From positions 32,597,003-32,637,147 of the forward strand of contig NC_068992.1 in assembly GCF_001194135.2 (NCBI RefSeq): a DNA stretch of 40,145 nt, read 5' to 3'. The stretch is from Octopus bimaculoides. Its lineage: Eukaryota. A program made the translations under genes and the position numbers. Under the pieces are notes generated by a model. It had not been told where the DNA came from, ran no database searches, and saw only the letters and a program-made list of their open reading frames with translations. Of this stretch, positions 2,634-38,633 are shown piece by piece (position 1 is the first letter of the stretch; each line of letters opens with the position of its first letter).

Positions 2634-3053
2634 TCAAAAATTTGTGTAATACAATATGTATGCTAGCAATATATATGCATATATGTATATATATGGTGCA
2701 ACGCCGTGCCGATAACCAGCTGGTAGAAGATCTTTCTGGGGTTTCCTAGAAGTAACATGGAACAGCCACTTTGATGTGGCTTCAAATTTACTTGTTAGTA
2801 TATTTACCACTCTGATCTCTTCATGAGATTTTACAACTAGCTATTTTGCTTATATATATATATATATATATATGTTTAATTGTGGCACAGCAAGGCACCA
2901 ATGTTTGGTAGAAACAGTAGTCGATAACAGTACGACGCAACACAAAGCTTCACTGAATGTATACAGACAAAGATATGTGTGAGCGGCGAACATAGAATAT
3001 TTTCGTCGCACCTCAAGGAAAAACACTCGATTAAAGGACAACCTAGAATGGAT

Positions 3054-3129
3054 AACCTAGTACTAGAGTTTCGGACTTTCCAGAATACTCTTGTTATCGG
3101 AAACCCTGCCAGTCTTCTTCAGCTAGGTT
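3054..3129 (-). ncRNA. Type I hammerhead ribozyme motif, family A copy 0 (best preserved)
   Basis: Minus strand: AACCTAG-CTGAAGA-AGACT..(43 nt domain)..AGTCC-GAAA-CTCTAG-TA-CTAGGTT. Perfect 7-bp stem I, intact CUGANGA and GAAA boxes, GUA cleavage triplet. Stem II closing pair is A.C. Confidence 0.8.
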
Positions 3130-3148
3130 CATCGAAGACGAAATTTAA

Positions 3149-3233
3149 AACCTAGCTGAACAAGACTAACAAGACTAACCAGATTTACGATAACAAACGT
3201 ATTCAGCAAAGGCCGAAACTCGGGTACTAGGCC
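3149..3233 (+). ncRNA. Type I hammerhead motif, family A copy 1 (core mutated)
   Basis: AACCTAG-CTGAACA-(9-nt duplication AAGACTAAC)..AGGCC-GAAA-CTCGGG-TA-CTAGG. G8 of the core is changed to C, so probably inactive. Confidence 0.65.
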
Positions 3234-3567
3234 ATTTATTCGGCGTTCTTTCTACAGGGAAGACAAAATTATTTCATGTTCGCTGCCTATATAAATGTTT
3301 GCCTATATACATTCAATGAAGCTTTACATAGCGTCGTACGGTTATCCACTGCAAACATTAGTGCCTTGTTGTGCTATTATTTCCTATTTATAATTCTACC
3401 TTTACAATGTTTTATTTAGCTTGAAAACAATACTATTGTATTGCAATAATATTTATAAATTTTTTATATAAAACTTTTTCAATGATCTCTGTTCTGTTTA
3501 CGGCTAGGCGTATCAGCCGAATATACTGGCATTGATGTAGCGGATATTTTAAATTTCGTCGTCGGTG

Positions 3568-3643
3568 AACCAAGCTGAAGAAGACTAACCAGATTTAAGA
3601 AAACTAACGTATTCTCGTAAGTCCGAAAATCGCGTACTAGTTT
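3568..3643 (+). ncRNA. Type I hammerhead motif, family A copy 2
   Basis: AACCAAG-CTGAAGA-AGACT..AGTCC-GAAA-ATCGCG-TA-CTAGTTT. Core boxes intact; stems I and III partly mismatched. Confidence 0.7.
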
Positions 3644-4861
3644 ATCCATTCTAGGCTCTCCATTTATCCAGCGTTCTTCCTAGAGGTAAGACAATTTTTT
3701 TCTTTATGTTCACCGCCCGCATACATCTTTGCCTATAGGTATTCAGTGAAGATTTACATAGCGTCGTACGGTTATCGACTACTATTTCCAGAAAACATTG
3801 GTGCCTTGTTGTGCCACTATTTCCTGTTTATAATTCCACCTGAATGGTGCTTTATTTAGCTGGATAATAATATTATTGTATTGCAATACTATTCATAATT
3901 TTTAGACATTTAATAACAGAGTGCCGTGAGCACCACCTCAGCCATCTTTGAGGTTATTATATCATTTTCTTTGTGTCGACATCTAGAATCCGAAAAAGTT
4001 GGGAGGAAGAATCGGTGAGGTTTGCAATAAGGTCGAAAATCCGGCTGAAAAAATTGTACCTCGATGCTATTACCACAACGATCGCCCACCCAAACTCAAA
4101 CTAAGGAGTTTAGTAACGTACCATCGTAAGCACACACGTTCAATCAATAACTTTGGCGTTGGTCCCTGAATCGTTTTTGAGGTTTTATGGCTCAGTTTCT
4201 AATATTCCTCGTTACCATCATAACGATAATGGGCTATTATCTTACTATCTTGTCTTACTTCCCTCTTAAATATATTTACATTGGTATATTAAAACACAAA
4301 CAATACCTTTGGGAGGTCGTTCTATGCTTTTTCTAGATATTATGGCTAAAAATATGTAATGTGAGACTCGTTCCTTGTCGGGATATCATATTCTTAAAGG
4401 CACGAGTCTTTGACTGCGTTTTTTTAAAGTTGTGGCGCTTGCGACGGTCTGTTACTAAACGCCTCACCGGCAGAATGATATCCTTGCATTGTATGCAGAC
4501 AATTAGACCCAGCTGATTATATAATCCGCTCTTGAGCTATTCAGACATGTACATTTTATTGAATATGCAGTCCATATCATACTTCAGAATTTGTGAGGGG
4601 CATTGCTGAGACAGGTGAATAAAATATAAATAAATAATAATTGAAGGACCGGTGTCAGTTCATTACGGCCGTTTGTAACGAATCCTTTAATTGATTAACG
4701 AGTACATTATATTATTATAAAGAACCCGTTTTCCGCAGATACTTAATGACATGCCAAATGTTTTAACATACTTTAAAATGCACGGAGCGAAACACTTTCA
4801 CTGATTCTGCTACAATTTTAGTTGACAGATTCAATCAACTGAAATAGTAGACGAATTAGTG

Positions 4862-5914: not shown

Positions 5915-6350
5915 TATACTGATATTTTGAGTTGTATTATAATGCTTACAATTTCTGTATAAAAATGTCCACTGTTCTCGGTTCTGTTTATGGCTTCGGC
6001 TATCAGTTGAGTGTATAAGGAATTGATATAGCGGATATTTAAAATGTTGTCTTTCGACGAACCAAGTTGACTAGAACTAAACAGATTTATGATAACAAAC
6101 ATAACCTGTTAAGTTCGAAATTGGAGTACTCGGTTATATATTTTCTATTGCGTTGTCCTAGTAGTACGATGAAAACATTATTTTATTCGCCGTCCACACA
6201 CATTTTCGCATTTATACATTCAGTGAAGCTTTACTATGGTGTCATACGGTTATCGACATCCATTTCCAGCAAACAATGGTATCTTCTTGTGCCACTATTT
6301 CTTATATATAATTCAACATTTAGGGTGCTTATCGCTGGAGAACAATATAT
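5915..6350 (+). repeat. Solo, roughly unit-length copy of family A repeat
   Basis: Colinear with 3430-3880 (GTTCTGTTTA.GGCT, GCGGATATTT, CATTCAGTGAAGCTTTAC, TTGTGCCACTATTTC). Followed by (GT)n at 6360-6405. Confidence 0.85.
6060..6135 (+). ncRNA. Type I hammerhead motif, family A copy 3 (core mutated, stems intact)
   Basis: AACCAAG-TTGACTA-GAACT..AACAG..TTATG/CATAA..CTGTT..AGTTC-GAAA-TTGGAG-TA-CTCGGTT. Confidence 0.6.
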
Positions 6351-11935: not shown

Positions 11936-12111
11936 NNNNNNNNNNNNNNNNNNNNNNNNNNNNNNNNNNNNNNNNNNNNNNNNNNNNNNNNNNNNNNNNN
12001 NNNNNNNNNNNNNNNNNNNNNNNNNNNNNNNNNNGTGGATTTGAAAAATTATAACATATAAGCACAAGACATGTACTCTATTACCTCGTATTTATATGTA
12101 AGTCTTGGCAA

Positions 12112-12181
12112 TCCTGCTGATGAGAGCTTCGCCTAGCAAATTATTTATTTGCTGAAGAGAGGTTGAAACCATTGTCCAGGA
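12112..12181 (+). ncRNA. Type I hammerhead motif, family B copy 1
   Basis: TCCTG-CTGATGA-(41 nt, inner hairpin AGCAAAT/ATTTGCT)-GAAA-CCATT-GTC-CAGGA. Confidence 0.75.
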
Positions 12182-12567
12182 AATAGTTGCTAATTGTTTT
12201 TATTTTTATTCATTTTCGAAATTACCCCTAATAGTGGTTTGGATTGTGACTACTCCCTCTAGTGGGTTCGATGTCCTATTATGGACATATTTTATGTGTT
12301 TAAATGTACACTTATATGAATAATATATAGACTATTTATTAGTTTTTCTACACGCTAGGCCACTGGTAATAAAACAATTCTAAATAAGTTTTTTCTACCC
12401 TGAAATTTATTAATGATAATGTTTTGGCTAATTTTGGAAGAATGTCGACGTTATTTATATTTGCTGCCTACAAAAAACTGCGCTTGCGCGGTGGATTTGA
12501 AAAGTTATAACATGTAAGCACAAAGCATGTACTGTATTGCCACGTATTTATATGTTAATCTTGGCAC

Positions 12568-12638
12568 TCCTGCGGATGAGAGCTTCACCTAGCAAGTTAC
12601 TTTATTTGCTAAAGAGAGATTGAAACCATGGTCCGGGA
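12568..12638 (+). ncRNA. Type I hammerhead motif, family B copy 2 (U4 to G core change)
   Basis: TCCTG-CGGATGA-..-GAAA-CCATG-GTC-CGGGA. Stem I is kept by a G.U wobble. Confidence 0.65.
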
Positions 12639-13029
12639 AAAAGATAGTAAATGTTTTTATTTTTCATTTCCTTTCAAAATTACCCCTAACAGTGGTTTGG
12701 ATTTTGACTATTTCTTCTAGCAGGTTAGATGACATATTATGGCGTTCTCTCATGTGTTTCAATGTACACTGTATTTATATGAACAATATATAGTCTATTG
12801 ACTAGTTTTTCTACAGGCTAGGTCACTGGTAGTAAAAAAGTCATAAATAATTTTTTGCTACCCTGAAATTTATTAATAATAATCTTTGGCTAATTTTGGA
12901 AGAAATTCGGCACTATTTTTATTTGCTGCCTTCAAAACACGGCGCTTTCGTGGTGGATATGAGAAGTTATAACTTGTAAGCACGAAGCATGTACTGTATT
13001 TCCGCGTGTTTAAATGTTAATCTTGGCAC

Positions 13030-13100
13030 TCCTGCTGATGAGAGGTTCGCCTGGCAAATCACTGTATTTGCTGAAGAGAGGTTGAAACCATGGTCCAGGA
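13030..13100 (+). ncRNA. Type I hammerhead motif, family B copy 3 (best preserved)
   Basis: TCCTG-CTGATGA-(42 nt)-GAAA-CCATG-GTC-CAGGA. Intact cores, 5-bp stem I, palindromic ACCATGGT stem III, GUC triplet with cleavage predicted after 13095. Base of stem II is imperfect. Confidence 0.8.
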
Positions 13101-13993
13101 AATAGTTGCTAAATGTTTTTGTTTTTCATTCACTTTCGAAATTACCCCTAATAGTTGTTTGGATTTTGACTACTCCTACTAGCGGGTCCGATGTCCTATT
13201 ATGGACAGGTTTTATGTGTTTNNNNNNNNNNNNNNNNNNNNNNNNNNNNNNNNNNNNNNNNNNNNNNNNNNNNNNNNNNNNNNNNNNNNNNNNNNNNNNN
13301 NNNNNNNNNNNNNNNNNNNNNNNNNNNNNNNNNNNNNNNNNNNNNNNNNNNNNNNNNNNNNNNNNNNNNNNNNNNNNNNNNNNNNNNNNNNNNNNNNNNN
13401 NNNNNNNNNNNNNNNNNNNNNNNNNNNNNNNNNNNNNNNNNNNNNNNNNNNNNNNNNNNNNNNNNNNNNNNNNNNNNNNNNNNNNNNNNNNNNNNNNNNN
13501 NNNNNNNNNNNNNNNNNNNNNNNNNNNNNNNNNNNNNNNNNNNNNNNNNNNNNNNNNNNNNNNNNNNNNNNNNNNNNNNNNNNNNNNNNNNNNNNNNNNN
13601 NNNNNNNNNNNNNNNNNNNNNNNNNNNNNNNNNNNNNNNNNNNNNNNNNNNNNNNNNNNNNNNNNNNNNNNNNNNNNNNNNNNNNNNNNNNNNNNNNNNN
13701 NNNNNNNNNNNNNNNNNNNNNNNNNNNNNNNNNNNNNNNNNNNNNNNNNNNNNNNNNNNNNNNNNNNNNNNNNNNNNNNNNNNNNNNNNNNNNNCGAAAC
13801 CACTATGATATATTGGGTCGTTGGCTGACGAGGAAATCGTCTAAGTTTTAGTGTAGTTTTCCGTTTGTTCTGCTTTCGTTTTTTCTCTTTCCTTTCCCTT
13901 GTTATGTTCTTTCATTTCAAGCCTTGATCTCTCCCCGTCCCTGTCTGTGTGACTGTTTGTCTCTCTGTCTCTGTACACGCACGCACGCACTCA

Positions 13994-19056: not shown

Positions 19057-19231
19057 TCTTCTTCTTCTTCTTCTTCTTCTTCTTCTTCTTCTTCTTCTTC
19101 TTCTTCTTCTTCTTCTTCTTCTTCTTCTTCTTCTTCTTCTTCTTCTTCTTCTTCTTCTTCTTCTTCTTCTTCTTCTTCTTCTTCTTCTTCTTCTTCTTCT
19201 TCTTCTTCTTCTTCTTCTTCTTCTTCTTCTT
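19057..19231. repeat. Uninterrupted (TTC)n microsatellite, ~58 units
   Basis: Direct inspection; source of the poly-K and poly-L ORFs in the track. Confidence 0.97.
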
Positions 19232-28657: not shown

Positions 28658-30749
28658 AACATATAAAGCCTATGTACTTTCGTATACATTGTCTCATTAT
28701 AATCATCATCATCATCATCATCATCATTTTCTCATCATGACACACAACAAATCTTAACTTCGTGTCTCTTTTATCTTGGTCTGAAAGCTTTTGCCACATA
28801 TAGTATATCACAGCGGAACGTGATAGTACTTGAGGCATATCATCTTACCACGGTCCAATGTTCATTTTGATTTTCGCATCATACGTAAATTTGACAGTCA
28901 CAATATTTTGCAGAGCTTTTTATTTAAATTCCATTCAGCACGCGTTGAAATTGTGTTCATGTTCACTTATTTCTTTAGTATTAAGTTTCACTAAACAGAG
29001 TCTTGTCAGCACAATTTCTTTCTCAATGGACATTACTGAATACATCTAGTTGAGCTACTACATATTTTTTTCTTTAAGTTTGAGCAACATGATTTAAATG
29101 ATTAACATAACTGTACTCGTCAGTATAATATTACTACATTATTTTCCACTCTGCAAATCACTCTTTTCTTTTCTGATCATGGACCCACCAGCTTTTCAAT
29201 GTCATTGATATTGCAATCTGTTCATAGCAGAATTTCGATAAATATATTAGATTTTACAGTAAAGAAACTGCTTTCTCGAAACATGGCACAATGAGACTAT
29301 TCGCATCATAATACATATCACCGCTTTTAACCTTATTAAGTACATTCTTTGGAAAGCGTGTCAGTTCTACTTTGGTCATTGTTTAGTGTCTTTTGTAAAT
29401 GATTTTCTCTTGAATTATTTGTATGATTTGATCCCCCCACCCATTTGTGTGAATTCATGTAGCTGTATGTGAAAAACAAATGATTCTTTTCAAAACATTT
29501 TTCGTTCCTGGGTGGCAATATTTCGTTTCTAATTGTATTTCATAAACAATTATTCAAAAATTATTAGCATTTCTATCACACTTAACTTCGATATCTGCCA
29601 CAAAGTGATAATTTCAATGTAATTTAATACAACTGGAACGCAGCAGACGTTTAACATCTCCATACGCTTCAGAAAGATGAACAGCATATAAATTATATTT
29701 AAAGAGTAATTGGCTTAAGTGAACAGGAAAGTTTAAAATTTAGTAGTTTCTCAATATTGAGGATTATAATGTTATTCACTTTTACGCCTCAGCTTGAAAT
29801 TCGCCTGCCATTCTGTTTTAATTATAACAGACTTCAAAATCTAGTGTATTCTAAAGAAACGATCGCTCTTCGTAATGACCAACTATGACCAACATTAATT
29901 TTTCAAGATTTGCACAAAGGCTGTGAACTTTTCTTGAAAATCTCTAGCACTTATTGCTTTACGCTAGAACCAGAGTCACCATATGATTCGCATATTCTTC
30001 TACAATGTGATTATCCAGGGAGCTACAAAATTAATGCACAACGCTGCCAATCCAAGACTGCTTTTTGCCGTCTTACTGATTTTGATGAAGAATTCCATGT
30101 ATTACCGTCTAATCACGCTCTTTATCTGCAGATGAATATTCAGTGACTCTCCTGCTATTCCTCATGCCTACTAACACTTTCTCTTATTGAGAGCTGTAGT
30201 GTGAGGAGTGGTAATTGACAGAATTGCAGACAATGTAACCTCTCATAACTCTCTCTCTCCCTCCTACATATATGTTTTTCTCTCACACAGATTTATATAT
30301 ATATATGTATATATATANNNNNNNNNNNNNNNNNNNNNNNNNNNNNNNNNNNNNNNNNNNNNNNNNNNNNNNNNNNNNNNNNNNNNNNNNNNNNNNNNNN
30401 NNNNNNNNNNNNNNNNNNNNNNNNTATATATAATGTACTGAACTCACTCTCTCATAGGATGTTACCTCTCATAACTCTCTCTCTCTCTCTCTCTCTTTCT
30501 CACACACACACACACACACACGCGCGCGCACATTTATTACTTCTCTTACTTCATTCTTTTTTTAACCGGTTGCGTTCTTTTCAATGTTTCTATCAGCGGT
30601 GTCATTTTGAAAAAAGATGCTGTTAGTCTTCGGTGAAAATTACAATTACACCATATTTGTAAAACACTATCTTCAAGTGCTATTTTTTTGTTATTGAATT
30701 GCTCTAAACGAATTTGACCATAAATATGTTGGAGATTTAGTACTTTTTA

Positions 30750-30976
30750 GGATATTAATAAAATTTGTCGGACCTATTTTCATGCCATCGGCCGTCGGAC
30801 CTATTCTTATATCTGTTTATATCGTTGCGTTTATGAATATGTTATTGAATGTACTGTAGTCTGATATTTCACGCATGCGTAGAATTCTGGAATAGCAGAC
30901 GTAAATAGTATGAACATTTCGTAAACTTTATGCATTCGATTGCATGAAAATAGGTTCGACTAATTTTATTATTACC
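30750..30976. mobile_element. MITE-like element (~227 bp) with ~35-bp TIRs, possible TTA target duplication
   Basis: TAATAAAATTTGTCGGACCTATTTTCATGCCATCG (30756-30790) versus the reverse complement of 30937-30971: 3 mismatches in 35. Outer ends GG..CC are flanked by TTA on both sides (30747-30749, 30977-30979). Confidence 0.65.
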
Positions 30977-31186
30977 TTAAAAAATACTAACTTTCATACA
31001 TTTGTATAGACAAATTAGTTTACAGCAGTTCAACAGCATAGACTTGCACTTTAAATAGTGTTTAGTTAGAGTGGTGTAATTGTAAATAAATACCCGTTCA
31101 TAGAAATTAGCTCAAATACTAACTGAATCGTCTCAAAACTTTTATTGTATAATTGTCATAAATATTCACGCTTTCAACAGAACACT

Positions 31187-34100
31187 GTGCCCAGAAAAAG
31201 AAGGGCAACAACCTGTCTCGAAAAGTTCCTTGTTCACAAAAGATTACTGAGTAAAGACAACAGACGTTAATTGAAGAAAGCAAACAAGGACTTAGCTCTT
31301 CTCAGTATCTCGAAGTAAAGCAAAGGTGATCGCAAGAAACCCGTGCAATGGAAATACCGGAAGAAACAGAGGCACGGAAAATGCAGATAGACAGAGGGGA
31401 CAGGAAACCCGAGCAATGGAAAAACTATAAGATTCAGAAGCACGGAGGAATGTGAATCGGATAAGAACACTGGAAACCAGCGCAATGGAAAAACCAAGTA
31501 AGCACGGAGAAAAGTGAATCGGCTGAGAACATAGAAAATCCGTGCAATGGAAACACCACGAGAAACAGAAGCACGGACAAATACTGATCGGCTGAGGAAA
31601 CAGGATTCTAGGGAAAAGACGTCGCTGCCACAAATTCAGCAGCGAAAAGCAAATAACCAGGCACGATACTAATCGCGACTTCCTCAGGAAAGAACGGGCA
31701 CTGAGAGAATGGCTAGAGTAGTTGATATGGCAGATTCTCATGAGAAAAAACGAAACCCAAGCCTGATGATGTTGCACTACTGTGAACATGTTTTTAACAG
31801 AACATGTCCTGACTGCAAAGCTTACTTTTGGGGTGCTAAGAAAACTAGCCTCTGCTGCGGCAAAGGAAAAATTAGCTATGACAAAGTTCCACAGATAAAA
31901 AAAAAACCCACAGAATTAATAGCTAAGTACTAAGATGTTAATCTAAGTGGTCAAAAGTTTCTGAACAAAATTCTTGACTACAATAATTTACTGTCTATGG
32001 CTTCACTTGGACTGAATAATTCATCAGTCGTAGCGTAGGATGTTAGCACTTTTATGCCTACTTTCAAGATTCAAGGAAATTTGTGCTACCGCATTGGAAG
32101 TCTTCTACCAGCAGTAAATAGGAAGCCAGTTTACGCGCAGCTATATATTGTTGACACTGAAGATGAGATGAGAAACAGGTTGTCATTCAGAGGATCAGAC
32201 AATGGCTTAATGAGAACATCTTGCTAGACTTGCAGAGAGCATTGCATATGCACACTCCATTTGTAAAGTTTTTAACAGGCTATTGATATAATCAAGGAAT
32301 ACTCTGCGCTAGGAAAATGTTCTACCGGTGATATTATTATAAGTCATGACAAAGGGCTTATTCCCGCTGCGTCACATGAGAGAACCTATAATCCACCAAC
32401 TGCATCAGAAGTTGATGTGATCATAGTGGGAGATGTTATCAATAATACCAATATTAAACCTGCGGATGTTGTTGTGCAGTACAGAGAGAACAATGGGAAG
32501 TAACATTAATCAGATCAACAGAAGCTATGACCATCTTCATTATGTACTTCTGTTTCCCTATGCAGAAGATAGCTGGAATTTGTTTTTTGAAGGATAATGA
32601 CCGAAGCAAAAAAAATCACTGTGACTTTTATTCTTATCGGCTTCAGATAAGATAGAAAGATCAAGATCGATTACACTTCCTGAGAACTCATCAAAAACAG
32701 CTTAAGGCTGAAAAGTACCAGGGCCTTCTAGATGTTATTGCAAATGGTAGTATGTATAACGTAGGGTCTAAAATCATTGCTCCCCCATCACACACTGGTT
32801 ATCCTCGATCTTACAGGGAGAGTTTCCAAGCTGAAATTGCTCTGGTGAGAGAGTTTGGAAAGCCAGACCACTCCATCACAATGACAACTAACACATACTG
32901 GACTGAGATAACGGATGCCCTGTTTGAAGGTGAAAGAACACAGGATCGACCTGACATTGCAGCCAGAGTGTTTAAAATGAAGTACGACTCTCTGAAGTAT
33001 GATCTATTAAAAAAGAGTGTCTTGGGAAACGTAATAGCACATGTCTCTACATATTGCTCTTTATGGCTGCTACAGACACGCCAAGAACGCCAGAGATCAT
33101 TGATCGAGTTTTATGTGCAGAGATACCAGATAAGGATATGAATTCAGACCTATTGGAGATTGTTGTAAAAAATAACATTCGTAGACCCTGTGGATGCCAT
33201 CCAGAATACAGACGCCAGTCACCAATCTTTGGAGGCAGGACACACATTATTAGAACTACTCGGACATCTACTGAAGTACGTAATAGCTTCATAGTGCCGT
33301 ACAACCCCCCCCCATTCTTATTTCTCCGATACAACTGTCATCTAAATGTTGAGGTTGTGCACACTGTACTCGCGGTGAAATATCTTTTGAAGTACCTCAC
33401 TAAGGGCCTGATAGGGTCAACGTTCATATCTGATCAAGCAGTACTGATGAAACAATTGGAATACTGCAAGAGTTTAACAATTCAAGCCTTAAATTGGTTG
33501 ATAATGAAATTGACACTTACCAAAATACATCTCATCTGGTGAGGCAATTTGGAAGATATTCTGGATTTCAATCCATTCCAGACAACCCGCTGTCATAAAT
33601 CTTTCATGCCATTTGAAAAATCAACAATCTCTTACTTTCGATGCTGAGCTACCTGAAAACATTGAGCTTGTAGCAAGAACAACTTTGACTGAGATTTTCA
33701 CATTACATAAATATGACTGCGACGCCAGAGACAAGCTATATGCTGAAATTCCAAAGTATTACACTTGGAATAAAGAAGAAAAGTGGCAAAATAGGAAAAG
33801 GGGAACAATCGGATGGAAACTATAAAACCAGTACTATTGGTCGCATACCCATTGTCGCTTACAATGTCCAGCAGAAGGAATTATATTACTTGAGGATGCT
33901 ACTACATCGTGTCAAAGGTCCCCAATTATATGCTGACTTACGGATTGTTAATGGTGGTCTATGTTTCAACTATCACGATGCGTGCACAAAGCTGGGACTT
34001 TTACAAGACGATGACGAAATCATTAGAACATTAGATTAAACCAAACATCACTGTTTCAGTGACCAGCTAAGACACGTATTTTGTACTGTTCTCCTCACTT

Positions 34101-35742
34101 GATGCCAAACGTTTATGGAAAAATACAAGGATGCATTGTGTGATAACAGCAAAAGGAAAAACTGCATAGGAAAACCAACAGAATTCCTTTACAATGAAGT
34201 CCTGCTTTCCATCAAAGTAAGAGTGACTAGAGAAGAAGTCATATTGGCAAATCTTACTCTTCCAGAGCCAGATTTTGAAAGTGAACTAGATGTTCTGCCT
34301 ATGATACTGCAGAAAGAGCTCAATGTTGATAAAGCTGCTCTCTATGACTGTGTTTTCGAGATGTATCCAACACTAAATTATGTATTTGAAGTATGTATTT
34401 GACCAAGCTGTTGGATCAGTTATAAACAAGGAGGGAAAAATATTGCTTGAACGCGAGTGGTAGCTCTGGAAAACTTACACAATCAATCTGATTCTCACTG
34501 AAGTTCGGTCACAAGGTCATATTGTTGTTGACATTTCAGTTTCCGGAATTGCAGCCACCCTGCTGGAAAATGGGGGAACTTTGTACTCCAGATGCAGTAT
34601 TCCACTGAGAATTGCAGAGGAATTTATGTGCCATATGAAAATAAGTGAATATGTGGTAAACGTTTCCAAAAGCAAGGCAACTGGTTATTGACGAGGTTAC
34701 AATGGGCCATAAGCATATCTATGAATGTGTTGATCGCAGTCTCAGAGAAGTTAGACAAGAACCAGTGAAGCTGTTTGGTAGTCTGACTGTTTTGTTTTCA
34801 CGGGACTGGAAGCAGATCCTGCCTGTGGTACAAAGAAGTTCCAGAGTCCAGATTGCTCAAGTCACATTAAGACAGTCATACATTTGGAAGGTTGTTCAAA
34901 GCCTGAAGTTGTCTGTCAATATGAGAGTCCAAAATTCTTGTGGTGATGACACTGCTTTCGCATCTTATCTGACCAGCTGTGGAATGGAACATTTCATATT
35001 AATCAAGAAATTGGTGAATACAAAATATCTATTCTTCCACCACATTTGATGGACTCAATAAGGCTACAGGACCTTTGTGAAGTAGTCTTCAGGGGTATTA
35101 ATGAGAAATATAGAAAGGGACAATGAATGAGCAGCAGGGCCATCGTTACTCCTACAAACAAGTTTGCTGAAGACGTTAATAAAGTTGTCAAGTCAAAACT
35201 TCTACAGGGCGATAGTAGAACTTATCGAAGTTGTGACACTTTACACGAAAATGAGACTGATCAATGATATCAATCCATGAGGATTTCTACCACACATTTT
35301 GGTTATGAAGAAGCACTCTTCCATTATGCTGCTCAGAAACCTTGATCCAGCAGTAGGTCATTGCAGCGGAATGAGATATTTAGTCTTGAATCTGCACAAC
35401 CACCTTATTGAAGCAGATGTGGCCAATGGGACACATGCTGAAATCCGAATAATGATACCACGAATTCCACTGATCACCACTGAAGACTACCCGTTCTTAT
35501 TTTCCAGGAAGCTGTTTCCTGTAAAACTAGCTTTTGGAATAACACCAAACCTATTTCAGGGCCAGACCTTAGAAAAAGGTGGAATTTACCTGCCAACACC
35601 TGTGTTTAGCCATGACCAGTTCTGAGTTGCCAACAGCAGGGTTGGTTCTGGGAACAACGTGCATATAATGGTTTTGGACTCAGAGTATAAAGGTATTAAA
35701 GGAATCTACACTGACAACGTTGTCTATAAGGAAATTCTTTAA
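31187..35742 (+). pseudogene. Helitron RepHel (HUH Rep plus PIF1-type SF1B helicase), multiply disrupted
   Basis: CPDCKAYFW..CCGKGK; GKPD..ITMTTN..WTEI..DRPDIAARVF; VPYNP..YNCHLNVE..KYLLKYLTKG; Walker A relic LNASGSSGK; IDEVTMG; DWKQILPVV; LSVNMRV; IMLLRNLDP; FPVKLAF..T..QGQTL; VFSHDQ; ends NVVYKEIL* at 35742. Confidence 0.92.
31337..31610 (+). repeat. ~69-bp minisatellite (4 units) in Helitron ORF N-terminal region
   Basis: GCAATGGAAA at 31345, 31413, 31482 and 31544; each unit also carries AGCACGGA/GGCACGGA and AATCGG-like motifs. Confidence 0.85.
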
Positions 35743-35801
35743 ACGATTAAAGCTTCACTCTTTTTATTTTCAAACTACAAGCAGGGGTTTTGACATGAAC
35801 A

Positions 35802-35839
35802 AGCTGAATCGACCGCCCGTAGGGCAGGTATTCAGCTAG
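35802..35839 (+). terminator. Helitron 3' hairpin and CTAG end (rolling-circle termination signal)
   Basis: AGCTGAAT-CG-ACCGCCC-GTA-GGGCAGGT-ATTCAGCT-AG|T. Confidence 0.85.
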
Positions 35840-38490
35840 TCTTTATAAATTAGCCACAGGCAGTTTATTGACTAAAGCAACTGCTTGCAATGCATCAATA
35901 CCAACTTGATAAATGATATAGGGTTATCCAGCTAAGTATCTAGAACTGAACTTCAAGGACATGTTTTAATATAGAAGAAAGAGTTATATAAATATTACGA
36001 GAGTGCTAAAAACATTTCTAGATAATAGATATTTCTTAAAACTTACCAGAAACGTTAACATTTCTCGAGAAAATTCTGTTTCCTCCAGAGCAATAAATCT
36101 ATTGGAAATGTTTTGCAAAATAGATATATACCGAAATACTATGATTGAGGTCACAAAAGCAAGGTTTGTAGATAATTATAGACATATCCTTCTGATTTTC
36201 ATACATATTTTGGACATTTGTAAAACTTATATATCTTACAATGCCAAAAAAAAAAATAATAAACACTCATAAAGTGTTATTGCTTATATTTTTTCCCTTA
36301 TCATCAACTTAACACAGTTGTAAAATATTTCTCATTCTTTTTACGATGTATAACCATTATGAAGTTCAGTTTGGCAGTTTTCTATATAGCAGATTATTCC
36401 ATTCTTAATAGCGACTTTAGGGTACTACCATTTGTTCGTACGTTGTACGTACACACACACACATATATACATACATGCATGTATGTATGTATATATATAA
36501 ATGTGTGCGTGTGTGCGTGTGTGTGTGTGCTTGCGCGTGCGTATGTGTGTATATGTATACATGTATGTATGTATATATGTATGCATGCATGTATGTGTGT
36601 ACACTTTGCGAAAGGTATTTGATAATATACTTGGTAAATTAATAAAATAACTCTAATCTAGCAAGAAAAGTAATAATAGTAATAATAATTTGTGAACGTG
36701 TTCTCGATAAGCTTTCTTATAAAACTGTTCATTGAATCCACTTTCAATACAGAATACTAGCTTTTGAAGTAGATAATTTTTTATTGTATGTTGAAACCTA
36801 CCATAAAATGTTATCGATGTCTTTACAACCCAAATAACACGAAGTTCCATCAGTTAAAAATATTTTATTGAATTTGAGTGCGTAGTCATTTAATACATAG
36901 AATATTAATGTTATGGATTTCGCATTCAAATACCTTCTTATTGCTTCTATCTTGCGCAGTAATTCTTCTGGATAACAGAGCTAGTAGTAAAACATCTATT
37001 TCATCTGGATCATTAAAGAAACGAAACATTTCCTACTATATGTCCTCAGCTCATCAACATCGACTCGAATTATACTAATTAACTCACGTAAATAACTTGC
37101 ACATACTATTACGATGGAAAAATCGCCATCAAAAATTATACAGTGATTCTAAATCCGTACTGCCTTCAGTGGAGATGATGAGATCTACTCAACTCTTAAG
37201 AATGAACTATTATTGTTTTTAAATCGTACATGTAATACATATATGGAAATAGATTCCATTGGCGTAATGCTATGGAACTGCGTGTGCATTTATCTAGCTT
37301 CCCTATATGCTATTCTGCAAATGTTCCGGAGTAAACAGTAGTGTGTTAAACTTTGCAGAAAAGTAAATATGATAACCTGAGAAATGCATAAGTAAATAGA
37401 TGGGTTGGCGAGATACTGCAGAAATGTTTCCGAAATATCAAATCCTGCAGTAAATACCTCAAATACAAATGACATCCTCATTAAATATGACCAGACTATC
37501 GATACCAATATTGGAGGAAAACACTTATCAAGAATCAAAATAAATATGATTTGATATTCTATTTTAATTCTAATTTGAAGAGAGGAGGATTGATATTTGT
37601 GGCATGCATGTTTTCCTTAATGCCGTAAATGATTTGTATTAGAGCGTTCAATTAAAAGTGGTTAACGAAATGGAAGCTAGTTGTGTTAAAAAGGTTATGA
37701 TTTTAGATCGAACAATATTAACTAACTCATTGTTTTAATGAGATTTAAGAGGCTTCCACCGACGAATGGACTTTAAATTTTAGATGAAGACGATGATGAG
37801 TATGATAAAGAGAATAAGGTTTATAACTATAATTTTACTCGTGAAATATATAAGTATAATGGCATGAGAAAAGCCATCGATATAAATCTAAAGTATAGAA
37901 GAATGCCATATACTTTTAAAGTTGTCAAAATGTAAGGATTTAGATTTTATTAAATACAGTCACCGACGTTACTCTTCTCAAAATTTACATGTGTATTGTT
38001 TTCAAGTTTCCCCAACGTTCTAGTAAAAACTGCTTCTAAATCTATTTGCAAATGACAAAACGTACAGGACAAATACATTTGGATTATTTAGATTGTCAAG
38101 TTACATGTTAAACAGAATAACCGGGAAATATGTCAATTCAAGCAAGAAATCAGCATAAAAATGAAGACAGGAAAATAAAGGAAAAATACATTGAGAAATT
38201 AAAACAAAGGCACCGAGCCTGACAGATGATTGACAAATATCGTTTGAAGAAAAGGATGTCTCCATTTGTTATATTTAGAATTTAATTTAAAGTTTATCGA
38301 AACGTGTTTAAAATAAGATATTCCATAATTAGAATAAATATAATTGCTTCAATCATACAATTGAGAATTATGACATCTTTAAATGTTTCCATATTTGAAT
38401 ATGGTGTTGAAAACCATGGTTGCTATAGAAATATATATCACTGTGACATTTGGTGTAACTTCCACATGCAGCAGTGTGAGTAACAGCAGT

Positions 38491-38563
<73 letters not shown>

Positions 38564-38582
38564 CAGCAGCAGCAGCAGTAGC

Positions 38583-38633
<51 letters not shown>
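38491..38633. repeat. (GTA)n microsatellite with (GCA) interruption
   Basis: Direct inspection; source of the poly-V and poly-L ORFs. Confidence 0.95.

What the first reader, a model, noticed from the sequence alone, without database searches (positions are those of the whole stretch)
2881..3905. Family A: ~410-nt tandem repeat with a hammerhead ribozyme motif in each monomer (retrozyme-like)
Seen: every copy has stem I arm - CTGA(A)GA - 43-nt stem II domain - GAAA - 6 nt - TA - complementary stem I arm. Column consensus of the four stem III spacers (CTCTAG, CTCGGG, ATCGCG, TTGGAG) is CTCGAG, giving a loop-less palindrome ACTCGAGT before a GUA site. Predicted cleavage sites at 3226 and 3636 define a 410-nt monomer. 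Established: tandem type I hammerheads with weak or palindromic stem III that act as dimers occur in newt satellite 2 and metazoan non-LTR retrozymes, and related hammerhead repeats include Schistosoma Sm-alpha and cricket pDo500; retrozymes yield monomeric circular RNAs. Inference: a non-coding, self-cleaving RNA mobile family, possibly uncatalogued in this lineage, with an unusually long stem II. Local copies are partly decayed.
Basis: partly seen in the sequence, partly recalled or inferred. Interest (0 to 1): 0.85.

Follow-up and report, generated by a model that had tools for sequence, protein, structure and literature searches.

The report
Decayed hammerhead-ribozyme repeat in an octopus genome
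This is an old, mutated set of copies of a small non-coding mobile repeat that carries a self-cleaving "hammerhead" RNA motif; such repeats are well known in animals, though the searchable papers held none describing them in octopus.

Summary
The repeat is real. Family A has four copies of a 410-440-nt unit:
- an inverted, 5'-truncated copy, M (2878-3150, minus strand);
- 1.8 tandem units joined to it head-to-head (3149-3905);
- a solo unit, c4 (5932-6350).

A type I hammerhead layout sits at the same place in every copy, but only M and the 3575 copy (c3) keep an intact CUGANGA box.

A hammerhead descriptor hits only this family and a second tandem family (12035-13221), against 0.003-0.2 hits expected by chance. 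The stems pair in 76% of cells versus 20-33% for shifted controls, with three compensatory pairs. The rebuilt locus ancestor has all core boxes, and two copies of it fold as the classic double hammerhead.

Against this:
- Rfam gives no hammerhead hit, even at E<=10.
- The base of helix II is an A.C mismatch in three of four copies.
- The motif is no better conserved than the rest of the unit.
- The monomer does not fold better than shuffled sequence.
- No copies from elsewhere could be retrieved.

The host is an octopod. The insertion shape matches Penelope-like-element retrotransposition: an inverted truncated copy, a partial tandem and microsatellite flanks.

Verdict: fossil copies of a non-LTR retrozyme-type element. 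It is a new member of a known kind and of moderate interest.

The parts
2878..3150 (-). Copy M: an inverted, 5'-truncated Family A copy. It is joined head-to-head to copy c2 at about 3148-3150. Its 3' end abuts the (TA)n run.
   Evidence: Inverted repeats I1-I4. blastn and nhmmer hits on the minus strand. Alignment A1.
3054..3129 (-). Hammerhead motif of M, the best-preserved copy.
- Helix I arms: 3129-3123 and 3060-3054, 7 of 7 bp.
- CUGAAGA: 3122-3116.
- Helix II domain: 3115-3073.
- GAAA: 3072-3069.
- CUCUAG: 3068-3063.
- UA: 3062-3061.
- Predicted cleavage between 3061 and 3060.
   Evidence: Pattern match. It is the only hit of the strict descriptor, against 0.003 expected.
3149..3570 (+). 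Copy c2, the first direct unit. It is 5'-truncated at helix I and continuous with c3.
3149..3233 (+). Disabled hammerhead of c2.
- The box reads CTGAACA (3156-3162), a G8-to-C change.
- A 9-nt duplication (AACAAGACT) lies at 3159-3183.
- GAAA: 3215-3218.
- GTA ends at 3226.
3571..3905 (+). Copy c3, the second direct unit. The array ends at about 3903-3909. The interval 3227-3636 is one cleavage-to-cleavage monomer of 410 nt.
3568..3643 (+). Hammerhead of c3.
- Helix I pairs at 5 of 7 positions.
- CUGAAGA: 3575-3581.
- Helix II: 3582-3624.
- GAAA: 3625-3628.
- AUCGCG: 3629-3634.
- UA: 3635-3636.
5932..6350 (+). Copy c4, a solo copy about 1.0 unit long. It is circularly permuted relative to the cleavage site and is followed by (TG)n.
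   Evidence: The blastn coordinates map its start to unit position about 3436 on c2 and its end to about 3433.
6060..6135 (+). Hammerhead relic of c4.
- Degenerate box TTGACTA: 6067-6073.
- It has the best helix II (6074-6116), with 10 of 11 proximal pairs including G10.1-C11.1.
- GAAA: 6117-6120.
- GTA ends at 6128.
   Evidence: (z = -3.0).
2851..2873 (.). (TA)11.5 microsatellite abutting the 3' end of M.
   Evidence: Penelope-like elements are reported to prefer microsatellite targets (PMC8557442).
6360..6406 (.). (TG)23.5 microsatellite just 3' of c4.

Best explanation
Family A is a set of old, decayed insertions of a small non-autonomous retroelement in an octopod genome. It is of the metazoan non-LTR retrozyme kind, which depends on Penelope-like elements (PLEs).

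Each 410-440-nt unit encodes a type I hammerhead on one strand:
- a 7-bp open helix I;
- the CUGAAGA box;
- a long, interrupted helix II of about 43 nt;
- the GAAA box;
- a 2-bp helix III capped by a palindromic tetraloop;
- a GUA cleavage site.

Inferred mechanism:
1. Multimeric transcripts fold two neighbouring motifs into a double hammerhead through the palindrome ACUCGAGU, and are cut after GUA into unit-length RNAs.
2. These RNAs may be ligated into circles.
3. A PLE reverse transcriptase/endonuclease copies a circular or multimeric template, starting from a fixed internal site about 220-270 nt 3' of the cleavage site.
4. This yields 5'-truncated partial tandems, an adjoining inverted truncated copy, and solo copies that are permuted relative to the cleavage site.

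What is shown: the repeat anatomy, the motif, its pairing, and the insertion architecture.
What is inferred: cleavage, circularisation, and the PLE dependence.

The four local copies are very probably inactive.
For: Motif is not chance:
- The strict descriptor gives 1 hit against 0.003 expected. Relaxed versions give 3 against 0.05 and 4 against 0.2. Every hit lies in Family A or Family B.
- The same descriptor gives 0 hits in 41 kb of Octopus vulgaris DNA.

Pairing:
- 76% of pair cells are paired, versus 20-33% when partners are slid.
- Three pairs changed on both sides, matched by 9 of 500 shuffles.

Ancestor:
- The majority ancestor of M, c2 and c3 has a perfect 7-bp helix I, CUGAAGA, GAAA, CUCGAG and GUA.
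- Its minimum-energy fold keeps helices I and II.
- Two copies co-fold into a double hammerhead with an 8-bp intermolecular helix III, at -55.7 versus -45.4 kcal/mol for two monomers.

Context:
- Family B in the same window has the same layout: a 41-nt helix II and a CCAUGG palindrome. It gets a sub-threshold Rfam Hammerhead_1 hit of 20.2 bits.
- The architecture is an inverted 5'-truncated copy head-to-head with a partial tandem, beside microsatellites. This matches published PLE insertions (PMC8557442; PMC11167929).
- Animal retrozymes have been reported as PLE derivatives (bioRxiv 10.64898/2026.07.22.740005).

Host:
- The host is an octopod.
- PLEs are abundant in octopus genomes (PMC13282606 and PMC8967140).

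Non-coding:
- GC content is 34%.
- Open reading frames within the repeat reach only 67 aa, and a translated-frame search found no protein relatives.
Against: - Rfam gives no hammerhead hit at the gathering score, nor at E<=10.
- A10.1.C11.1 replaces the conserved G-C pair at the base of helix II in three of four copies.
- c4 has the best helices but a ruined box, TTGACTA.
- The hammerhead segment is 66-76% identical between copies, and the rest of the unit 69-80%. There is no sign of extra constraint.
- The circular monomer folds no better than shuffles, with z = +0.38 and -1.04. Published retrozyme circles are described as highly self-paired.
- Only four copies from two loci are available. 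With that few, the compensatory-change evidence is modest.
- There are no expression or cleavage data.
Confidence: 0.75

Rival explanations
1. Family A is an ordinary SINE-like or satellite repeat. Its hammerhead-like motif is non-catalytic, either a chance resemblance or a long-dead relic. The conserved long hairpin serves another role or none.
For: - No Rfam hit.
- A.C mismatch at positions 10.1/11.1.
- c4 keeps the hairpin but not the box.
- The motif shows no extra conservation.
- The monomer has no compact fold.
Against: - Chance expectation for the full descriptor is 0.003-0.2 per window, and the hits fall only in the two tandem families.
- Helix I directly abuts both the box and the GUA site.
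- The reconstructed ancestor dimer folds as a double hammerhead.
- Family B shares the architecture.
Confidence: 0.12
2. The copies are fragments of the pseudo-LTR or untranslated region of an autonomous Penelope-like element. They would then not be a separate non-autonomous family.
For: - PLE pseudo-LTRs carry type I hammerheads with enlarged helix II and a small palindromic helix III (PMC4209133).
- The insertion architecture is PLE-like.
- Retrozymes group as sister to pseudo-LTRs in Xenopus.
Against: - The tandem period is 410-440 nt with no ORF between units.
- c4 is a complete solo unit of about 1.0 length.
- An autonomous PLE tandem unit would include a roughly 3-kb RT-EN ORF.
- No reverse-transcriptase search of the whole window was completed.
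Confidence: 0.1
3. The tandem and inverted arrangement arose by local DNA duplication, inversion or unequal crossing-over of a single insertion. It would then not result from the retrotransposition mechanism.
For: - There are only 1.8 tandem units and a single inverted junction.
- The copies are about equally diverged from each other.
Against: - The inverted copy joins exactly head-to-head, with both copies 5'-truncated.
- Microsatellite flanks occur at both loci.
- The independent solo unit has a similar 3' end.
- Together these fit the recurrent PLE pattern.
Confidence: 0.03

Closest known systems
Metazoan non-LTR retrozymes (Cervera & de la Pena 2020, PMC7229834), including mussel repeats of 350-390 bp and axolotl Rtz_331/Rtz_353
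   Same: - Tandem non-coding units of a few hundred bp, each with a type I hammerhead, and GC below 50%.
- Helix III of 2 bp capped by a tetraloop (palindromic in Family A), as in HHR_Amex2.
- A mismatch at the base of helix II is tolerated in HHR_Amex2.
- Dimer-dependent cleavage is reported for the axolotl motifs.
   Different: - Helix II is about 43 nt, with 11 interrupted proximal pairs plus a 4-bp distal stem, instead of about 4 bp.
- No recognisable loop 1-loop 2 contacts.
- No compact predicted fold for the monomer.
- Only 1.8 tandem units are present here.
- There are no expression data.
Minimal hammerheads of Penelope-like elements (Cervera & de la Pena 2014, PMC4209133)
   Same: - Enlarged helix II.
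- A small palindromic helix III, implying dimers.
- High sequence variability.
- Pairs of motifs on opposite strands 100-700 bp apart.
- Tandem/inverted insertion structure.
   Different: [quoted passage not shown]
- Family A has no extra nucleotide, and has A.C at that pair in three of four copies.
- Family A has a 7-bp helix I, compared with 4-5 bp.
- The unit carries no RT-EN ORF.
Newt satellite 2, Schistosoma Sm-alpha and cricket pDo500 hammerhead repeats (Rfam RF00163 Hammerhead_1)
   Same: - Type I topology.
- Tandem genomic repeats.
- A weak helix III.
   Different: - Rfam's RF00163 model does not detect Family A at all.
- It scores Family B at only 20.2 bits against a gathering score of 34.
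- Helix II is much longer here.

Membership tests
Hammerhead ribozyme, type I (Rfam RF00163 / CL00010) | CUGANGA core box | tested here: inconclusive
   The box is intact in M and c3 and in the majority ancestor. It reads CTGAACA in c2 and TTGACTA in c4.
Hammerhead ribozyme, type I (Rfam RF00163 / CL00010) | GAAA box and an NUH cleavage triplet | tested here: met
   GAAA and GUA are invariant in all four copies.
Hammerhead ribozyme, type I (Rfam RF00163 / CL00010) | Open-ended helix I directly flanking the box and the cleavage site | tested here: met
   M pairs at 7 of 7 positions. Across the copies 82% of cells are paired.
Hammerhead ribozyme, type I (Rfam RF00163 / CL00010) | Helix II hairpin closed by G10.1-C11.1 | tested here: inconclusive
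   The hairpin is present and has three compensatory pairs. The closing pair is A.C in M, c2 and c3, and G-C only in c4.
Hammerhead ribozyme, type I (Rfam RF00163 / CL00010) | Score at or above the Rfam gathering threshold | tested here: not met
   No hammerhead match at the gathering score or at E<=10.
Hammerhead ribozyme, type I (Rfam RF00163 / CL00010) | Site-specific self-cleavage | not testable with these tools
   This needs in vitro transcription of monomer and dimer RNA.
Metazoan non-LTR retrozyme | Tandem repeats of 150-450 bp, each with a type I hammerhead | tested here: met
   There are 1.8 units of 410-440 nt, each with a motif at the same position. A solo unit lies nearby.
Metazoan non-LTR retrozyme | Non-coding with low GC | tested here: met
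   GC is 34%. ORFs within the repeat reach 67 aa at most. The translated-frame search found no relatives.
Metazoan non-LTR retrozyme | Monomer RNA highly self-paired | tested here: not met
   Circular-fold z-scores are +0.38 and -1.04 against shuffles. The copies are about 25% diverged, so this test is weak.
Metazoan non-LTR retrozyme | Expression as unit-length linear and circular RNA | not testable with these tools
   No transcriptome data are available here.
Penelope-like-element type insertion | 5'-truncated partial tandem with an adjacent inverted 5'-truncated copy | tested here: met
   M on the minus strand joins c2 head-to-head at 3148-3150, and both are 5'-truncated. The criterion comes from PMC8557442.
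Penelope-like-element type insertion | Optional 30-40-bp tail at one end, and microsatellite targets | tested here: inconclusive
   The 3' end of locus 1 lies about 30 nt beyond the 3' end of c4 in unit coordinates. The AT-rich ends make this alignment ambiguous. (TA)n and (TG)n microsatellites flank the two loci.
Penelope-like-element type insertion | RT plus GIY-YIG ORF (autonomous element) | tested here: not met
   There is no long ORF inside or between units. If the element is PLE-related, it is non-autonomous.

The most novel reading that the evidence does not exclude
Octopods may carry a lineage-specific class of type I hammerheads with a bipartite helix II of 41-43 nt. The feature is shared by two repeat families (A and B) with no detectable sequence similarity. 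Younger copies elsewhere in the genome could still cleave as dimers and produce abundant circular RNAs of about 400 nt. The inverted-plus-tandem footprints seen here would then be direct structural evidence, in an invertebrate, that retrozymes are mobilised by Penelope-like reverse transcriptases from circular or multimeric templates.
Probability: 0.25. Interest if true: 0.6.

Novelty: new member of a known kind. Interest (0 to 1): 0.4.

Why it matters
Hammerhead-bearing tandem repeats are already documented across animal phyla, molluscs included, so their presence here is no surprise. Three points give the finding modest value.

1. A full-text search found no paper describing octopus hammerheads or retrozymes. 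Octopus repeat surveys list hundreds of unclassified SINE families (PMC13282606).
2. Two families in one 40-kb window share an unusually long helix II. Standard Rfam screening misses or under-scores both, so such elements may be under-counted.
3. The insertion anatomy independently fits the recent proposal that animal retrozymes depend on Penelope-like elements.

Tried and rejected
- **Rfam.** The gathering-threshold search of the whole window gave no hits. The permissive search of 2700-4100 gave only weak miRNA-like and snoRNA-like matches, caused by the M/c2 palindrome.
- **External copies.** All attempts failed:
  - two metagenome pattern scans;
  - one scan of bacterial and archaeal genomes;
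  - a protein-space search with an alignment of the repeat's most open translated frame, which gave 297 candidates and none scoring;
  - nhmmer of the Family A and Family B profiles on 41 kb of O. vulgaris DNA;
  - look-ups of two window ORFs, neither on record.
- **tRNA-like SINE head.** ARAGORN found none.
- **Homology between Families A and B.** nhmmer detected none.
- **Minimal hammerheads lacking helix III.** None found in the window.
- **U3-A8 core covariation as an explanation for c4's TTGACTA.** Rejected, because U3.U8 is not a pair.

Full report
**What is there**

The window is eukaryotic. It is 34% GC, dense in microsatellites, and has seven runs of N.

Family A has four copies:
- M: 2878-3150 on the minus strand.
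- c2: 3149-3570.
- c3: 3571-3905. It is continuous with c2, and the spacings are 410, 430 and 440 nt.
- c4: 5932-6350, a solo copy.

Pairwise identity between copies is 66-80%. Tandem Repeats Finder did not call the array, which has only 1.8 units. nhmmer with the family profile finds no further copies in the window.

**The motif**

All four copies carry the same layout at the same unit position:
- a helix I arm;
- a 7-nt box;
- a helix II domain of 43 nt (52 nt in c2);
- GAAA;
- a 6-nt spacer;
- UA;
- the complementary helix I arm.

GAAA and GUA are invariant. The box is CUGAAGA only in M and c3. Copy c2 has a G8-to-C change plus a 9-nt duplication. Copy c4 has TTGACTA. The spacers and the 3226/3636 cleavage arithmetic are correct.

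**Is it chance?**

I wrote a descriptor with these requirements:
- 6 bp of helix I abutting both the box and the cleavage site;
- CUGANGA;
- at least 4 of 5 pairs at the base of helix II;
- GAAA;
- a 2-8-nt spacer;
- UH (U followed by A, C or U).

| Helix I mismatches allowed | Hits | Expected (300 Markov simulations) |
|---|---|---|
| 0 | 1 (M) | 0.003 |
| 1 | 3 (M and two Family B copies) | 0.05 |
| 2 | 4 (adds c3) | 0.2 |

Every hit lies in one of the two large tandem families. The same descriptor finds nothing in 41 kb of Octopus vulgaris DNA.

**Structure across copies**

- On the four-copy alignment, the hammerhead pairing scheme is satisfied in 76% of cells. Sliding the partners gives 20-33%.
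- Three pairs changed on both sides: G-C to A-U, C-G to A-U and C-G to U-A. Nine of 500 shuffles matched this.
- With four sequences from two loci, this is supportive rather than conclusive.
- Helix II has 11 proximal pairs with a conserved A.A interruption, then a 4-bp distal stem and a conserved AUAACAAA loop.
- Copy c4 folds best, with z = -3.0.

**Ancestor reconstruction**

The majority of M, c2 and c3 gives GAACCUAG-CUGAAGA-[helix II]-GAAA-CUCGAG-UA-CUAGGUU.
- It has a perfect helix I and intact boxes.
- Its minimum-energy fold keeps helices I and II.
- Two copies co-fold into the textbook double hammerhead. The helix III is an 8-bp intermolecular ACUCGAGU helix, at -55.7 versus -45.4 kcal/mol for two separate monomers.

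**Evidence against**

- Rfam detects no hammerhead here, at the gathering score or at E<=10.
- The pair at the base of helix II is A.C in three copies.
- The motif is no better conserved than the rest of the unit.
- The circular monomer folds no better than shuffled sequence.
- The local copies are therefore fossils. Catalysis is untested.

**Context in the window**

A second family, B (12035-13221), has a 462-nt period and 2.6 units, and is bounded by assembly gaps. It shows no detectable sequence similarity to Family A. Its hammerhead is more canonical: CCUG-CUGAUGA-[41 nt]-GAAAC-CAUG-GUC-CAGG. It scores 20.2 bits on Rfam Hammerhead_1 (E = 0.072), below the gathering score of 34. A helix II of 41-43 nt and a 6-nt palindromic spacer are thus shared by two families. 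This argues that the long helix II is a lineage trait and not decay.

**Host**

The window's degraded Helitron spans 30425-35851.
- Its only protein relatives are from Octopus vulgaris, at 74% and 68% identity.
- It is 79-83% identical in DNA to two O. vulgaris loci.

The host is therefore an octopod.

**Mechanism**

Published PLE insertions are 5'-truncated partial tandems. They often have an inverted 5'-truncated copy at the 5' end, an optional 30-40-bp tail, and a bias toward microsatellites (PMC8557442).

A purified PLE protein cleaves and extends both DNA strands. It starts reverse transcription at internal template sites, and hammerhead cleavage is not needed in vitro (PMC11167929).

Family A fits this pattern:
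- M and c2 join head-to-head, and both are 5'-truncated.
- (TA)n and (TG)n microsatellites flank the two loci.
- c4 is almost exactly one unit long but is permuted relative to the cleavage site. Its template was therefore circular or multimeric, and not a cleaved linear monomer.
- The 3' end of locus 1 lies about 30 nt beyond that of c4. This is tail-like, but the AT-rich alignment there is ambiguous.

PLEs are abundant in octopus genomes, with an expansion near a Jukes-Cantor distance of 0.2 (PMC13282606). A 2026 preprint argues that animal retrozymes are PLE derivatives.

**Comparison with known families and novelty**

The closest known kinds are metazoan non-LTR retrozymes (PMC7229834) and PLE minimal hammerheads (PMC4209133).

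Family A differs mainly in three ways:
- its very long helix II;
- the A.C closing pair;
- the lack of a compact predicted monomer fold.

No paper on octopus hammerheads or retrozymes was found. I file it as a new member of a known kind and rate its interest as moderate.

Noticed in passing
window 12035-13221: Family B is a 462-nt tandem repeat of 2.6 units at 83% identity, bounded on both sides by assembly gaps, so the array is probably longer than assembled. Each unit has a type I hammerhead: CCUG-CUGAUGA-41 nt-GAAAC-CAUG/CAUU-GUC-CAGG. The middle copy has CGGATGA instead of the box. Rfam Hammerhead_1 scores it 20.2 bits (E = 0.072), below the gathering score of 34. It shows no detectable sequence similarity to Family A.
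   Followed up: partly
window 30425-35851: A degraded Helitron with Helitron_like_N, PIF1 and Pif1_2B domains split over several broken frames. It is 79-83% identical in DNA to two Octopus vulgaris loci (OX597830.1 and OX597814.1). This identifies the host lineage.
   Followed up: yes
window 2994-3241 (junction at about 3148-3150): The head-to-head junction of M and c2 creates a long imperfect palindrome, with arms of up to 157 nt at 72-81% complementarity. If transcribed it would form hairpin dsRNA. It is the cause of the weak miRNA-like Rfam matches at 3103-3174.
   Followed up: partly
window 31438-31558: A 62-nt unit repeated twice at 81% identity inside the Helitron-related region. Window segments 31300-31474 and 31502-32655 both map to overlapping parts of the same O. 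vulgaris locus, which suggests a local duplication.
   Followed up: no
window 19057-19231 and 38491-38633: Two very long trinucleotide microsatellites: (TCT)58 at 100% purity and (GTA)47 at 97%.
   Followed up: no
window 3159-3183: A 9-nt tandem duplication (AACAAGACT, 2.8 copies) lies immediately 3' of the hammerhead box of copy c2. It lengthens that copy's helix II domain to 52 nt.
   Followed up: yes
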